From Octopus bimaculoides (Eukaryota): a stretch of DNA of 64,000 nucleotides. Where the stretch lies: positions 16,500,297 to 16,564,296 of the forward strand of contig NC_068998.1 of assembly GCF_001194135.2 (NCBI RefSeq), given 5' to 3'. The position numbers and the translations under genes were made by a program. The notes below the pieces were generated by a model. That model saw only the letters and a list, made by a program, of their open reading frames with translations, had not been told where the DNA came from and did not search any database. Every line of letters starts with the position of its first letter. Position 1 is the stretch's first letter. Shown in pieces: positions 16,397 through 24,100 of the stretch.

Positions 16397-17129
16397 CATA
16401 TATATGTAGTGGATCTTGCAGGCGAAATGTAGATTCGATCCTAAATAGCCAAATTTAAATTAACGTTTCAACAGCACTTTTCTCACGAGGGAAAACAATA
16501 GCTTTTCTGTAACAGCAGTTTACATTTGCTAGATGCCTTAGCTAAGCAAAATAATGTCTTCGTCACTTGACCCTTCTAAACTCTTCTATTTCACCAAAAT
16601 CTAGAATTAAGATAACAAGAACCCCCAAGCAAAAGTCAGTTAGTGACAACTCGAGTTAGTAAAAACCTGAGTTAGGCAAAGCGACCATCCGTTAGTGAAT
16701 GGACAGCTAGTTAGGCCCACAAGCAGGCAGCTAATATAGACAAATGGTCAGAGGGAGAAAGAAGTTTACAGTCAGCAACTATGGGACAACTTTCTAGGAC
16801 TCTACAACTTTTACTAGCTCAATTTCTTTTCCCTAACAACATCATTCTATCTCTATCTGTGGATTACTACTAAGAGAACGTGTACACAAACTATACAAGG
16901 AAAATCTACAACATCTATCTATACTTCGCATGCTTTTCTATTTACTAATTATACATACCAAGCCGTTGTGGTTTGGGATTTTTTTTACTATATAAAGGTA
17001 AATAAATATTTTCTTCACAACTTCAATCACTGTTCTTTCATCTTTACATAATGGCAATCAACGAAGAATCAATCCTTACAAACTGATTACGACTCCGACG
17101 TTCCATACTATTGTTTACAAATTAATTTC
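16397..17129. repeat. Left arm of a ~730-bp inverted duplication (partner 21961-22706)
   Basis: Collinear reverse-complement matches throughout, e.g. CTGATTACGACTCCGACGTTCCATACTATTGTTTACAAATTAATTTC vs GAAATTAATTTGTAAACAATAGTATGGAACGTCGGAGTCGTAATCAG, and TATATGTAGTGGATCTTGCAGG vs CCTGCAAGATCCACTACATATA. Confidence 0.92.
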
Positions 17130-17462
17130 GCTAATTTTTCAGATTAACACCCGCACGATTTTAACAACACCCCACCACTACCACCACCACCACCCAAAAA
17201 AAGTCGGATTTTTTGCGTGGAATGAAGTACCCTGACCTCCTAATTTGCTGCAAATCCTATATTACAAAATCCCGTTACAAAAATAAACTTCTATCGTTAC
17301 GGATATCCTGTAGCTTATTTTGATTNNNNNNNNNNNNNNNNNNNNNNNNNNNNNNNNNNNNNNNNNNNNNNNNNNNNNNNNNNNNNNNNNNNNNNNNNNN
17401 NNNNNNNNNNNNNNNATATATATATATATACATATATATATATCCTCCTGACGAAGGTAAAA

Positions 17463-21100: not shown

Positions 21101-24100
21101 ATCTCGGTACGCTAAACATCGTCCCATGTTAAACGTGTTGTTTACTTGGGAAATGGGTTGAAATGTAAAAGTGGGATTTAGTTACTTCTTTCGTTTTCTT
21201 AATTACTTCTCTTTAATATAAAATTTAGTTTGAAATTTAATACACAATTATTGATGATTTATTTGTATCAAATATTTCCTAACTTTTTTGAAGAGCTTAT
21301 TAANNNNNNNNNNTTATCTTTCTCTCGCCTACAAATATGAACGGTTTAAAAACGCCAAAAGAAACAACAAAACAACGGTTCCAAAATTATTTTCGATGGA
21401 ATTCTGATCCAAGCACACCACATAATCCCTGATAACTTATTTTATTTTGGGGAATTTTCACAAGATATTGTTTGATTCAGGATTCCGCCTTATAAATAGA
21501 AACAAATTACAGATATGGACTATGATTTGAAAGCAAAAACTTCGAAAAATAGTGGAAATTTTAGGATTTATGGGGTGGGGGATCAAAGCCTTGTGAGTGG
21601 ATTTGGTTGACGGAAATTGAAAGAAGCTCGTTGTATATATATGTGTGTGTGTGTCTGTGTTTGTCCCCCACCCAACATCGCTTGACAACCGATACTGGTG
21701 TATTTACGTCCCCGTAACTTAGCGGTTCGGCAAAAGAGACCGATAGAATAAGTACTAGGCTGACAAAGAATAAGTTCTGGGGTCGATTTGCTCGACTAAA
21801 GGCGGTGCTCCAGCATAGCCGCAGTCAAAATGACTGAAACAAGTAAATGAAGGAAAAAGTAAAATTTATTCTCTTTCTTGGTCTTAGCATTTTAACCTGA
21901 ATCTAATTCTTGTATATATGTGTGTGTATATGTAACAGTAGAAGTTTTTTTGTATCGGTTGAAATTAATTTGTAAACAATAGTATGGAACGTCGGAGTCG
22001 TAATCAGTTTGTAAGGATTGGTTCTTCGTTGATTGCCATTATGTAAAGGTGAAAGAACAGTGATTGAAGTTGTGAAGAAAATATTTATCTATCGTTACAT
22101 TGTAAAAAAAATCCCAAACAACGACGGCTTGGTATGTATAATTAGTAAATAGAAAAGCATGCGAAGTATAGATAGATGTTGTAGATTTTCCTTGTATAGT
22201 TTGTGTACACGTTCTCTTAGTAGTAACCCACAGATAGAGATAGAATGATGTTGTTAGAGAAAAGAAATTGAGCTAGTAAAAGTTGTAGAATCGTGGTAAG
22301 TTGTCCTATCGTTACTGACTGTAAACTTCTTTTTCCCTCTGACCATTTGTCTATATTAGCTGCCTGCTTGTGGGCCTGACTAGCTGTCCATTCATTAACT
22401 GATGGTTGCTCTCCTTAACTCAGGTTCTCTGACTTTTGCTTGGGGGCTCTTGTTTTTTTTAACTATCCAGAATGATAGACATAGATTTCGTTGGTGGTAC
22501 TTGTTATTTTAAGTCTAGCTTTTTGGTGGCCTATAAGAGGTTAGAAGGGTAAAGTGGGGAAGACATTTTGCTTAGCTAAGGCATCTGGAAAATGTAAACT
22601 GCTCTGGCAGAAAAACTATGAGAAAAGTGCAGTTGAAGTGTTAATTTAAATTTGGCTATCTAGGATCAAATCCACTTCATGCCTGCAAGATCCACTACAT
22701 ATATGTATGTGTATATATATATATATATATATATATATATATATATATATACACACATCATCATCATCATCATCGTTTAACGTCCGCTTTCCATGCTAGC
22801 ATGGGTTGGACGATTTGACTGAGGACTGGTGAACCAGATGGCTACACCAGGCTCCAATCTAATTTGGCAGAGTTTCTACAGCTGGATGCCCTTCCTAATG
22901 TCAACCACTCTGAGAGAGTAGTGGGTGCTTTTACGTGCCACCAGCACAAAGGCCAGTCAGGCGGTACTGGCAACGGCCTCACTCAAAATGGTGTATTTTA
23001 CGTGCCACCTGCACAGGAGCCAGTCCAGAGGCACTGGCAACAATCTCGATTGAATGTCTTTACACGTGCCAAGAAGGCGATGCTGGGCACAGGTGCCATC
23101 ACGATTTCGCTTTCGCTTGCCCCAACAGGTCTTCACAAGCCGAGTTTCGTATTGACCACACATGCACAATAAACAGCTTTGAAATTACAAAAATTACAAG
23201 GTGCATTCCAGAAATTTTGAGACTTTTTTCAGGAGAGACATTTATTAATTTCAAAGAAGTACAAAAATCTAATCACCTTCAAAGTAGAATCCTCTGACTT
23301 AATGCACTTGTTGAAATGCTCCAGCCACTTCATTAAGGCCCCATGGAAGTCTTCCAAAATGAAGGTGTCCGGGACCCTTCTCACTACCTCTATCATCTTC
23401 TCCTTCAGCTTGAGGAACAACCAAAAGTCTCAGGAAGCAAGGCCTGGACTATAGGGAGAGTTTTCATACTTATATCTGTCAAGTAGTTGGTTACCAGGAT
23501 AGAAATGTGAACTGATGTGCTGGTGCCACTGACCTGAGTGAAAGAGCCCTGGCCTTTTGTAATGAAATCTCTTCCTGAACTCCCTCAAAACCTCCACAGA
23601 CTACTCTTTATTGACTGTCTAGCCTAAGAAAACCCAGTGGATGTAGATGATGCCTTTGCTGTTGAAAATGGGAATCACCATGAGCTTCCTGGTGGACTCG
23701 CTTTGCCAGGCCCCTTGTGTCAGCAAAAAGAAAATGTGCAACTCATACAAGTTAATTCATAAGCAGTCAGGAGCATTTCATAAGTTTCTGTAATATATTT
23801 GCCCAGTTCAACACAAGACGTTATTACTTAGCAAGCTTCCAAATTGTCTCCCATGTCCTAACTGCATTCTGCAGACTAGTCAGCTGTAAGCAGCAGTGTT
23901 TAGCTCAAAAGTTGGCAGATCAGCTTATTAGATGTATAGTAATGATATGCTAAAATTACAATAATGTAGGACAGTTATAACTGCCTCTCTTAAAAAAACT
24001 CTCAACATTTCTGGAATAAACCTCATGGCTCCCAGCTAAATGACAAAGAACTTCTCACTGACACAATCACTAACCTGCAGATACACAGTTCCTTCTCCCT

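What the first reader, a model, noticed from the sequence alone, without database searches (positions are those of the whole stretch)
16397..22706. GOT1 promoter and exon 1 are bracketed by a ~730-bp inverted duplication: a potentially invertible promoter cassette
Arms 16397-17129 and 21961-22706 are reverse complements and resemble no other repeat in the window. They enclose ~4.8 kb containing the CpG-rich promoter and GOT1 exon 1. Because the layout is mirror-symmetric, GOT1 intron 1 and any divergent transcript would carry the same sequence in the same sense. Recombination between the arms would flip the promoter and exon 1 toward the secreted-protein gene. Alternatives are a local fold-back duplication, or two independent insertions of an unrecognised repeat. 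No TSD was seen; both outer ends run into (CA)/(TA) microsatellite. The repeat is seen; the mechanism is speculation.
Basis: partly seen in the sequence, partly recalled or inferred. Interest (0 to 1): 0.75.

Follow-up and report, generated by a model that had tools for sequence, protein, structure and literature searches.

The report
Old inverted repeat around octopus GOT1 start
Two mirror-image copies of a ~0.8-kb non-coding sequence really do bracket the promoter and first exon of the octopus GOT1 gene. They are an old, fixed, passively inherited duplication that occasionally copy-corrects itself, and nothing suggests a switch that flips the promoter.

Summary
The inverted repeat is real. 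The arms are 16385-17129 and 21961-22719 (94.4% identical over the inner 466 nt, about 80% over the outer 240 nt), and they are the longest and best repeat pair in the window. The window is Octopus bimaculoides. Both arms lie at orthologous positions in the gapless O. sinensis and O. vulgaris assemblies, and the enclosed segment has the same orientation in all of them, so mis-assembly is excluded. All three assembly gaps are collinear with those assemblies. The 660-N gap sits inside a species-specific transposon with terminal inverted repeats and an 8-bp target-site duplication.

The duplication predates the species split: outer-arm divergence is about 2.4 times the orthologous divergence. The inner ~470 nt have been homogenised by arm-to-arm gene conversion (6-8 sites shared by both arms within a species, against 0 of the control pattern).

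No recombinase, transposon hallmark, RNA family or ORF is present in the arms, and no further copy was found in about 240 kb of octopod sequence. Flipping would cut exon 1 off from exons 2-9. The closest analogue is the human F8 int1h repeat pair.

An extra finding is that the inter-arm interval is the only CpG-undepleted domain in the 64 kb. Whether the arms arose by local duplication or by two insertions of a low-copy element remains open. Interest is low to moderate.

The parts
16385..17129 (.). Left arm of the inverted repeat (outer ~240 nt diverged, inner 466 nt homogenised), ~0.86 kb upstream of the GOT1 ATG
   Evidence: orthologous copies at L001 8749-9509, L002 8780-9538 and L005 8757-9512
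17130..17275 (.). O. bimaculoides-specific insertion (~140 bp, ends approximate) interrupting the inner end of the left arm
   Evidence: Absent from the other five arms in alignments A1 and A2
17276..17304 (.). Remainder of the left arm after the insertion (..CAAAAATAAACTTCTATCGTTACGGATA)
   Evidence: nhmmer 17271-17304
17326..17415 (.). Assembly gap within a (TA)n microsatellite; its flanks are collinear with the gapless O. sinensis and O. vulgaris assemblies
17583..17631 (.). Inner extension of left-arm homology beyond the microsatellite
   Evidence: I5 (82% over 49 nt); alignment A3
17991..18102 (+). GOT1 exon 1 coding part ([37 protein letters not shown] + 1 nt), with a GT donor at 18103
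   Evidence: identical N-terminus in XP_014773021.1
16900..22300 (.). CpG-undepleted (presumably germline-unmethylated) domain; its two edges fall inside the arms
   Evidence: the same is seen in L001 and L002 (9000-13500)
19356..20270 (.). O. bimaculoides-specific element with TIRs of at least 109 nt (19356-19464 / 20162-20270) and an 8-bp TSD CAACTTTG (19348-19355, 20271-20278). It contains the 660-N gap and explains the small inverted repeat around that gap
   Evidence: empty site in L001 and L002
21304..21313 (.). 10-N assembly gap with collinear flanks (L001 has 123 bp here)
21584..21851 (.). Copy of a dispersed SINE-like repeat just inside the right arm (many copies in the window)
21866..21914 (.). 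Inner extension of right-arm homology (partner of 17583-17631)
21927..22719 (.). Right arm of the inverted repeat, in GOT1 intron 1 (21927-21960 pairs with 17276-17304)
   Evidence: orthologous at L001 13012-13481, L002 13163-13637 and L005 13126-13594, where only the inner ~470-510 nt are retained
24451..24645 (+). GOT1 exon 2 (outside the repeat). It fixes the functional orientation of exon 1

Best explanation
The feature is an old, low-copy inverted duplication of ~0.8-0.9 kb of non-coding DNA. One copy lies ~0.9 kb upstream of the GOT1 start codon and the other lies in intron 1.

It arose before O. bimaculoides split from the O. vulgaris/O. sinensis lineage and has been inherited in one fixed orientation since then. 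It probably arose by a fold-back or template-switch event at the self-complementary (TA)n/(CA)n tracts that border the arms. That origin is inferred.

The two arms occasionally pair within the chromosome, and a break in one is repaired from the other. This non-crossover gene conversion has kept the inner ~470 nt at 93-96% identity while the outer ~240 nt drifted to about 80%. The homogenised part lies inside the unmethylated promoter domain, where breaks may be more frequent; this link is also inferred.

A crossover between the arms would invert the promoter and exon 1. That would produce a GOT1 null allele, so such alleles should be rare and selected against. The repeat is a structural relic and a liability. 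It is not a programmed switch.
For: Shown:
- The repeat exists and is the only such pair in the window.
- The window is 100% identical to O. bimaculoides GCA_001194135.2.
- Both arms are at orthologous positions, and the spacer has the same orientation, in gapless O. sinensis (two copies) and O. vulgaris.
- In the outer segment ObL-ObR identity is 79.7%, against 90.8% for ObL-OsL. That is JC 0.24 against 0.098, so the duplication is about 2.4 times older than the species split.
- In the inner segment ObL-ObR is 94.2% and OsL-OsR is 93.1%, while the orthologous pairs are 93.4% and 91.9%.
- Sites where both arms of one species share a state different from both arms of the other number 6-8. The control 'cross' pattern gives 0. 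Nine of the twelve 'orthology' sites cluster in the transition zone at the outer edge of the homogenised tract.
- The arms have no tRNA, no Rfam family above threshold and no ORF longer than 39 aa.
- No further copy was found in the window plus L001, L002, L004 and L005.
- Homology stops at both arm ends.
- All annotated GOT1 proteins of the three species start with this exon 1 joined to exon 2.
Against: - The genome-wide copy number of the arm could not be measured. No octopus genome can be searched by DNA here, so a low- or middle-copy transposon family is not excluded.
- Both copies share both ends, which a full-length mobile element would also explain.
- The 6-against-0 site-pattern argument rests on few sites (binomial p about 0.016) and on one alignment.
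- Part of the contrast between the outer and inner segments could reflect faster decay outside the unmethylated domain. That effect is too small to account for it: orthologous identity is 90.8% in the outer segment and 93.4% in the inner.
- No population or long-read data were available to rule out a segregating inversion.
Confidence: 0.62

Rival explanations
1. The arms are two independent insertions, in opposite orientation, of one unrecognised low- or middle-copy non-autonomous mobile element (~0.8 kb with microsatellite-rich ends). Both insertions happened before the Octopus species split. Gene conversion afterwards is as in the best explanation. Only the origin differs.
For: - Both arms share the same two ends.
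- The octopus genome is ~45-66% repeats, with hundreds of unclassified SINE-like families (PMC13282606).
- The same window holds another inverted pair (6251-6799 / 14751-15138) that is demonstrably mobile, with a target-site duplication and an empty site in O. sinensis.
- A transposon with terminal inverted repeats inserted inside the spacer, so the locus does accept insertions.
Against: - No third copy was found in about 240 kb of octopod sequence, even with a profile search.
- There are no target-site duplications, terminal inverted repeats, LTR-type ends, poly-A tail, tRNA head or ORF.
- Homology continues for 49 nt beyond the inner microsatellite.
- A ~90-nt head-to-head partial copy sits at the outer end of the left arm in O. 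sinensis and O. vulgaris. That looks like local fold-back copying at a (TA)n tract, not transposition.
- Two hits of a rare family within 6 kb would be an unlikely coincidence.
Confidence: 0.25
2. The arms are functional mirrored elements, such as boundary or insulator elements or binding-site clusters. They delimit the unmethylated GOT1 promoter domain and are maintained by selection together with concerted evolution.
For: - The only CpG-undepleted domain in 64 kb (about 16.9-22.3 kb) starts and ends inside the two arms. The same holds in O. sinensis and O. vulgaris.
- The innermost ~230 nt of all six arms are 94-99% identical across species and arms.
- Argonauta hians has its own, unrelated inverted repeat (8743-8916 / 15010-14845) at the two edges of its equivalent domain.
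Against: - Cross-species identity of the arms (91-96%) lies within the range of neighbouring non-coding DNA (87-95%).
- O. sinensis and O. vulgaris have lost or replaced the outer third of the right arm, and O. bimaculoides carries a ~140-bp insertion in the left arm. Neither suggests constraint.
- An unmethylated TSS-proximal domain flanked by gene-body methylation is the standard pattern for constitutive octopus genes (PMC9476566) and needs no special boundary.
- Inverted pairs of repeats within 10 kb are common in these genomes, so the Argonauta parallel may be chance. It shows no sequence similarity to the Octopus arm.
Confidence: 0.06
3. The region is a programmed or polymorphic invertible promoter cassette. 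Recombination between the arms flips the GOT1 promoter and exon 1 towards the upstream gene in some cells or individuals.
For: - The geometry permits it.
- The arms have recombined, as shown by gene conversion.
- The O. vulgaris annotation places a divergent first exon 109 bp from the GOT1 ATG, which suggests a bidirectional promoter.
Against: - The orientation is the same in all four assemblies of three species.
- There is no recombinase candidate and there are no short recombination sites.
- The arms have diverged by 6-20%, and the longest perfect tract is at most 103 nt.
- An inversion would inactivate a housekeeping gene.
- The divergent ORF of O. vulgaris is frameshifted in O. bimaculoides and O. 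sinensis.
Confidence: 0.04
4. The repeat is an assembly artefact, for example a fold-back chimera or a mis-oriented contig in the gapped O. bimaculoides scaffold.
For: - Three gaps lie between the arms.
- A second small inverted repeat hugs the 660-N gap.
- A 153-bp exact duplication around another gap in the window shows that the assembly does contain artefacts.
Against: - Each arm lies inside a contig with unique sequence on both sides.
- The arms differ by 6-20%.
- Both arms and the spacer order are reproduced in two independent gapless long-read assemblies of other species.
- The small inverted repeat is the terminal-repeat pair of a transposon with a clean 8-bp target-site duplication and an empty site.
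Confidence: 0.01

Closest known systems
Human F8 int1h-1 / int1h-2 repeats (haemophilia A intron 1 inversion)
   Same: Both are pairs of ~1-kb inverted low-copy repeats with one copy in intron 1 of the gene and the other upstream of it (int1h is 1041 bp). Intrachromosomal recombination between the F8 copies inverts the promoter and exon 1 and abolishes the full-length mRNA (PMC7098248). The geometry and the predicted consequence are the same here.
   Different: The F8 copies are ~140 kb apart and almost identical, and inversion alleles have been observed. Here the arms are 4.8 kb apart (3.5 kb in sister species) and 80-94% identical, and no inverted allele has been seen.
Palindromes and inverted segmental duplications with arm-to-arm gene conversion (e.g. 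human Y-chromosome palindromes; from general knowledge)
   Same: Two inverted arms stay more alike within a species than expected from their age. Both arms share species-specific states, which is the signature of concerted evolution.
   Different: The Y-chromosome arms are 9 kb to 1.45 Mb long, more than 99.9% identical and carry genes. Here the arms are 0.8 kb, non-coding and only partly homogenised.
Bacterial invertible promoter switches (fimS/FimBE, hin/hix; 'invertons'; from general knowledge)
   Same: A promoter-bearing segment is bracketed by inverted repeats.
   Different: Those switches use short (9-40 bp) sites and a dedicated site-specific recombinase encoded nearby, and both orientations coexist in populations. 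None of these features is found here.
Pairs of dispersed transposon copies in opposite orientation (SINE or MITE pairs)
   Same: Such pairs are non-coding, a few hundred bp long and inverted, within a repeat-rich genome. The same window holds such a pair at 6251-6799 / 14751-15138.
   Different: That pair has further family members, a target-site duplication and a species-specific insertion. The GOT1 arms have none of these, and both are orthologously placed in three species.

Membership tests
Low-copy inverted repeat / inverted segmental micro-duplication (substrate for non-allelic homologous recombination) | Two copies in inverted orientation on one chromosome, several hundred bp long, with high identity | tested here: met
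   The arms are ~750 nt, with 94.4% identity over 466 nt and about 80% over the outer 240 nt
Low-copy inverted repeat / inverted segmental micro-duplication (substrate for non-allelic homologous recombination) | Low copy number in the genome (not a dispersed repeat) | tested here: inconclusive
   Only two copies per locus were found in the window plus L001, L002, L004 and L005 (about 240 kb) by BLAST and nhmmer. A genome-wide search is not possible with these tools
Low-copy inverted repeat / inverted segmental micro-duplication (substrate for non-allelic homologous recombination) | Sequence exchange between arms (gene conversion, concerted evolution) | tested here: met
   There are 6-8 concerted sites against 0 cross sites, and identity steps from 80% to 94% along the arm
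Low-copy inverted repeat / inverted segmental micro-duplication (substrate for non-allelic homologous recombination) | Inversion alleles of the intervening segment are observed | not testable with these tools
   Four assemblies show one orientation. No read-level or population data were available
Site-specific invertible promoter switch (inverton) | Short, defined recombination sites as the inverted repeats | tested here: not met
   The arms are ~750 nt, diverged and rich in indels
Site-specific invertible promoter switch (inverton) | A recombinase gene in or next to the element | tested here: not met
   No ORF of 40 aa or more lies in the arms. The window has no ORF of 110 aa or more apart from low-complexity sequence, repeat-derived ORFs and ORFs spanning gaps
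Site-specific invertible promoter switch (inverton) | Both orientations are found | tested here: not met
   The orientation is the same in O. bimaculoides, O. sinensis (two copies) and O. vulgaris. Somatic or population variation was not testable
Transposable-element family (two insertions) | Additional dispersed copies | tested here: inconclusive
   None was found in about 240 kb. This bounds only very high copy numbers
Transposable-element family (two insertions) | Target-site duplications and terminal structures (TIR, LTR, poly-A, tRNA head) | tested here: not met
   The ends run into (CA)n(TA)n, no TSD or TIR is present, ARAGORN finds nothing, and Rfam matches only the microsatellite, far below the gathering scores
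Transposable-element family (two insertions) | Presence or absence of a copy between related species (an empty site) | tested here: not met
   Both arms are present in all three Octopus species. Argonauta is too diverged to align
Assembly fold-back artefact | Absent from independent assemblies; arms (near-)identical; junctions at contig ends | tested here: not met
   The repeat is present in two gapless assemblies, the arms have diverged by 6-20%, and both arms are internal to contigs

The most novel reading that the evidence does not exclude
The two arms are mirrored functional elements that mark both edges of the unmethylated GOT1 promoter domain, and gene conversion keeps them alike. The inverted-repeat arrangement itself might then be much older than its recognisable sequence. 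Argonauta hians has an unrelated-looking inverted repeat at the same relative positions, which could be a positional homologue whose arms have evolved in concert beyond recognition.
Probability: 0.05. Interest if true: 0.6.

Novelty: new member of a known kind. Interest (0 to 1): 0.25.

Why it matters
As it stands, this is a clean and well-dated example, in a cephalopod, of a small inverted duplication evolving by arm-to-arm gene conversion. It sits in the same risky geometry as the human F8 intron 1 inversion repeats.

- It shows that the gapped O. bimaculoides scaffold is correctly ordered at the 5' end of GOT1.
- It predicts a specific class of rare null alleles: inversion of the promoter and exon 1.
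- It gives a concrete locus for asking whether unmethylated promoter domains are recombination-prone in cephalopods.
- It does not reveal a new regulatory mechanism. The coincidence of the arm positions with the edges of the CpG-undepleted domain, and the parallel repeat in Argonauta, are the only aspects that might repay further work.

Tried and rejected
- **Whole-region palindrome.** I tested whether 16.4-22.7 kb is one large degenerate palindrome centred on the 660-N gap. It is not: sensitive BLAST and Smith-Waterman alignment with shuffles find no homology between the two halves beyond the arms and a 49-nt extension.
- **Artefact at the 660-N gap.** I tested whether the small inverted repeat around that gap is an assembly artefact. 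It is not: it is the terminal-repeat pair of a species-specific element with an 8-bp target-site duplication and an empty site.
- **SINE head.** The start of the arm loosely resembles A and B boxes, but ARAGORN and Rfam find nothing.
- **Coding capacity.** No ORF in the arms exceeds 39 aa.
- **Look-up of an arm ORF.** An exact look-up of the 39-aa arm ORF in public assemblies, meant as a proxy for copy number and independent contigs, found nothing on record.
- **Homology to the Argonauta repeat.** There is no score above shuffled controls and no nhmmer hit.
- **Alternative first exon.** An alternative GOT1 first exon upstream of the left arm would put both arms in one pre-mRNA. All annotated isoforms start at the same exon 1.
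- **Divergent coding exon.** The exon annotated in O. vulgaris next to the GOT1 ATG is not conserved as an ORF in O. bimaculoides or O. sinensis.
- **Further genome sampling.** At most ~0.5 Mb could be added, which would bound only copy numbers above several thousand.
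Full report

Yes. The repeat finder reports an inverted pair 16664-17129 / 21961-22426 (466 nt ungapped, 94% complementary), together with outer pieces 16385-16485 / 22619-22719 and 16498-16552 / 22565-22619. Self-BLAST gives the same picture (94.4% over 466 nt and about 80% over ~238 nt). With more sensitive settings the pieces join into 16385-17129 <-> 22719-21961.

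The arm matches nothing else in the 64-kb window by BLAST or by a profile search. It is the longest and best repeat pair of the whole window.

A recalled vertebrate GOT1 sequence, used only as a probe, locates nine GOT1 coding segments on the + strand. Exon 1 is 17991-18102, with a GT donor at 18103, and exon 2 is 24451-24645. The N-terminus is identical to the RefSeq O. bimaculoides protein. The left arm is therefore ~0.86 kb upstream of the ATG and the right arm is in intron 1.

**2. Source of the window, and the gaps**

A protein search with the concatenated exons found octopod GOT1 proteins. Their genomic loci were then fetched:
- L001, O. sinensis
- L002, O. vulgaris
- L003, O. bimaculoides
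- L004, Argonauta hians
- L005, a second O. sinensis copy

L003 is 100% identical to the window, Ns included, so the window is O. bimaculoides GCA_001194135.2 chromosome CM046618.1. L001 and L002 contain no Ns.

The three gaps flagged by the scan program resolve as follows.
- Gap 17326-17415 falls in a (TA)n tract. The sequence on both sides continues collinearly with L001 9510-9630.
- Gap 21304-21313 is collinear with L001, which has 123 bp at that point.
- Gap 19502-20161 lies inside sequence that O. sinensis and O. vulgaris lack altogether: window 19088 aligns to L001 11084 and window 20271 to L001 11098.

Reading the junctions around the last gap shows an element 19356-20270. It has terminal inverted repeats of at least 109 nt and is flanked by an 8-bp direct duplication, CAACTTTG. 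The other two species carry a single CAACTTTG at an empty site. This explains the second small inverted repeat that hugs the gap (I2). It is an ordinary transposon with terminal inverted repeats (hAT-like, judging by the length of the duplication, from general knowledge). It is not an assembly fold-back. A further ~250 bp (19089-19340) is also specific to O. bimaculoides.

**3. The repeat is not an artefact, and it is old**

Both arms are present at orthologous positions in every Octopus copy, flanked by the orthologous neighbours:
- L001: left 8749-9509, right 13012-13481
- L002: left 8780-9538, right 13163-13637
- L005: left 8757-9512, right 13126-13594

In each case exon 1 and the spacer are in the same orientation. 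In O. sinensis and O. vulgaris the right arm keeps only the inner ~470-510 nt. The outer part has been replaced by other repeats.

Five arms continue for ~35 nt past '...AATTAATTTC'. The O. bimaculoides left arm carries a private insertion of roughly 140 bp (about 17130-17275) and resumes at 17276-17304. Beyond the inner microsatellite a further 49 nt are still homologous (17583-17631 <-> 21914-21866, 82%). Beyond that point, and beyond the outer microsatellites, alignment scores do not exceed shuffled controls.

In the outer segment the two O. bimaculoides arms are 79.7% identical, while the orthologous left arms of O. bimaculoides and O. sinensis are 90.8% identical. These correspond to Jukes-Cantor distances of about 0.24 and 0.098, so the duplication is about 2.4 times older than the species split.

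The split is placed at about 34 Mya (PMC10700109) or 13.3-33.5 Mya (PMC13282606). With the neutral rate of 0.0036 per My quoted in PMC13282606, the outer-arm distance corresponds to roughly 33 My. The overall range is about 30-80 My, depending on calibration. This dating is an inference.

**4. Gene conversion between the arms**

The inner ~470 nt tell a different story from the outer segment. Identity between arms within a species is 94.2% in O. bimaculoides and 93.1% in O. sinensis. The orthologous comparisons give 93.4% (left arms) and 91.9% (right arms).

I counted quartet site patterns in two alignments. Sites where both arms of one species share a state that differs from both arms of the other ('concerted') number 6-8. 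Examples are window 16700/22390, 16843/22247, 16921/22169, 16932/22158 and 17091/21999. The homoplasy control pattern ('cross') gives 0. Of the 12 'orthology' sites, nine cluster in the indel-rich transition zone just outside the homogenised tract. If no sequence had been exchanged, concerted and cross patterns would be equally likely, so 6:0 has p of about 0.016.

The simplest reading is at least one conversion before the species split and at least one after it, confined to roughly 16640-17129 / 21961-22450. The longest perfect tract between the arms is 103 nt in O. bimaculoides and 78 nt in O. sinensis and O. vulgaris. By the standards known from mammals (general knowledge), this is a poor substrate for frequent crossover.

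**5. What the arm is not**

- ARAGORN finds no tRNA-like head.
- Rfam hits are only the self-complementary (TA)n, at less than half the gathering score.
- No ORF exceeds 39 aa, and that 39-aa ORF is not on record in public assemblies.
- The arm's own two ends are not inverted repeats of each other.
- A profile built from the arms finds no further copy in the window, L001, L002, L004 or L005. The one exception is a ~90-nt head-to-head partial copy of the arm's outer end immediately upstream of the left arm in O. sinensis and O. vulgaris (L001 8625-8714), with a vestige in O. bimaculoides at about 16345-16396.

That small local palindrome, and the (TA)n/(CA)n tracts at every arm boundary, fit an origin by fold-back or template switching at hairpin-forming microsatellites. 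This is an inference. A low-copy mobile element is not excluded, because no octopus genome can be searched by DNA with the tools available.

For contrast, the other inverted pair in the window (6251-6799 / 14751-15138) is clearly mobile. Its right copy is specific to O. bimaculoides, is flanked by an ~11-nt duplication (TAACATGCATT) and has an empty site in L001, and other family members exist.

**6. Could it be an invertible promoter cassette?**

Nothing supports this reading.
- The orientation is identical in four assembled copies from three species.
- There is no recombinase candidate anywhere in the window.
- The arms are long and diverged, unlike short recombinase sites.
- All annotated isoforms join this exon 1 to exon 2.
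- An inversion would leave exons 2-9 without a promoter or a start codon.

The geometry is almost exactly that of the human F8 int1h repeats: 1041 bp, one copy in intron 1 and one upstream and inverted. There, recombination causes a disease inversion and has no regulatory role (PMC7098248).

The O. vulgaris annotation does place a minus-strand first coding exon 109 bp from the GOT1 ATG, which would put the left arm in that gene's first intron. However, that ORF is frameshifted in O. bimaculoides and disrupted in O. sinensis, and the O. bimaculoides annotation starts the upstream gene 8.5 kb away.

**7. An additional feature: the CpG domain**

CpG observed/expected is 0.32 for the window and 0.04-0.58 in every 1-kb bin except 17-22 kb, where it is 0.85-1.17. 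At finer scale the undepleted domain runs from about 16.9 to about 22.3 kb, so both of its edges lie inside the arms. The same holds in O. sinensis and O. vulgaris (9000-13500). In the Octopus species the retained and homogenised part of each arm is the part that lies inside the domain.

Octopus methylation is concentrated on the bodies of constitutively expressed genes and spares the TSS region (PMC9476566). An unmethylated island at the 5' end of GOT1 is therefore expected, and Argonauta has one of similar size (9000-14500). This may explain why the CpGs of the inner arm are conserved, and it may explain why conversion is confined there. The second point is an inference.

Argonauta also has an inverted pair (8743-8916 / 15010-14845, 75% over 178 nt, unique within its 30-kb locus) at the two edges of its domain. 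It has no detectable similarity to the Octopus arm. Given how common inverted repeat pairs are in these genomes, I treat this as probable coincidence and record it as the basis of the most novel reading.

**8. Verdict**

The switch interpretation is not supported. The feature is a real, old, low-copy inverted duplication that evolves by arm-to-arm gene conversion and is fixed in one orientation. It is a new member of a known kind. Whether it began as a duplication or as two insertions of a mobile element needs a genome-wide search. Interest is low to moderate (0.25).

Noticed in passing
window 19348-20278: O. bimaculoides-specific element 19356-20270 with TIRs of at least 109 nt and an 8-bp TSD CAACTTTG. 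O. sinensis and O. vulgaris have an empty site. Its interior is the 660-N gap. A further ~250 bp (19089-19340, containing a SINE-like fragment) is also absent from the sister species.
   Followed up: yes
window 16900-22300; L001 and L002 9000-13500; L004 9000-14500: This is the only CpG-undepleted domain in the 64 kb (observed/expected about 1.0-1.3 against 0.32 overall). Its edges fall inside the two arms. It is conserved in O. sinensis and O. vulgaris, and Argonauta has a domain of similar size around GOT1 exon 1.
   Followed up: partly
L004 8743-8916 and 14845-15010: Argonauta hians has its own inverted repeat (178 nt, 75%, unique within the 30-kb locus) bracketing GOT1 exon 1 at the edges of its CpG-undepleted domain. 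The right copy is ~80 bp upstream of exon 2. It has no sequence similarity to the Octopus arms.
   Followed up: partly
L005 (O. sinensis CM016873.1 25,435,084-25,478,984) compared with L001: There is a second, truncated GOT1 copy (259-aa model) ~120 kb from the main copy, head-to-head and 96.6-98.7% identical. It has an abrupt fold-back junction at L005 ~36926/36932. It is either a real inverted segmental duplication or an uncollapsed haplotig or fold-back artefact of that assembly. It also carries both arms.
   Followed up: partly
window 6251-6799 and 14751-15138: This second inverted pair (91-94%) belongs to a mobile family. The right copy is an O. bimaculoides-specific insertion with an ~11-nt TSD (TAACATGCATT) and an empty site at L001 4486-4497. 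Further members lie at window 34853-35008 and at L001 3141-3353.
   Followed up: yes
window 6398-6550 and 6561-6713: A 153-bp stretch is duplicated at 100% identity on either side of the 10-N gap at 6551-6560. This is most likely a gap-closing artefact of the assembly.
   Followed up: no
window 17130-17275: An insertion of roughly 140 bp (ends approximate), private to O. bimaculoides, interrupts the inner end of the left arm. It contains a (CCA)n run, and no other copy is present in the window.
   Followed up: partly
L001 8625-8714, L002 8660-8748, L005 8631-8721; vestige at window ~16345-16396: A ~90-nt head-to-head inverted partial copy of the arm's outer end lies immediately upstream of the left arm, across a microsatellite. 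This small local palindrome suggests fold-back copying at the (TA)n/(TG)n tract.
   Followed up: partly
window 17640-17882 (minus strand); L002 9650-9892: The O. vulgaris annotation starts the upstream 1099-aa gene with a coding exon 109 bp from the GOT1 ATG, implying a bidirectional promoter. The ORF is frameshifted in O. bimaculoides and disrupted in O. sinensis. The 'intergenic' 9.5-16.9 kb is nevertheless CpG-depleted like a methylated gene body.
   Followed up: partly
window 17484-17530: There is a short degenerate telomere-like tract (TTAGGG/TTAGAG/TTAGCG units) between the left arm and the GOT1 promoter. It is shorter in O. sinensis and O. vulgaris.
   Followed up: no
window 16099-16305 and 22756-23103: Copies of a common SINE-like repeat (CATCAT...TTTAACGTCC...) lie just outside each arm in direct orientation, so they are independent insertions and not part of the inverted duplication. 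The right copy is 94% identical to 62660-63000.
   Followed up: partly
L001 14186-21292: O. sinensis and O. vulgaris carry ~7 kb of extra sequence in GOT1 intron 1, just outside the right arm, relative to O. bimaculoides. They also carry ~2.6 kb extra just outside the left arm (L001 6157-8748).
   Followed up: no
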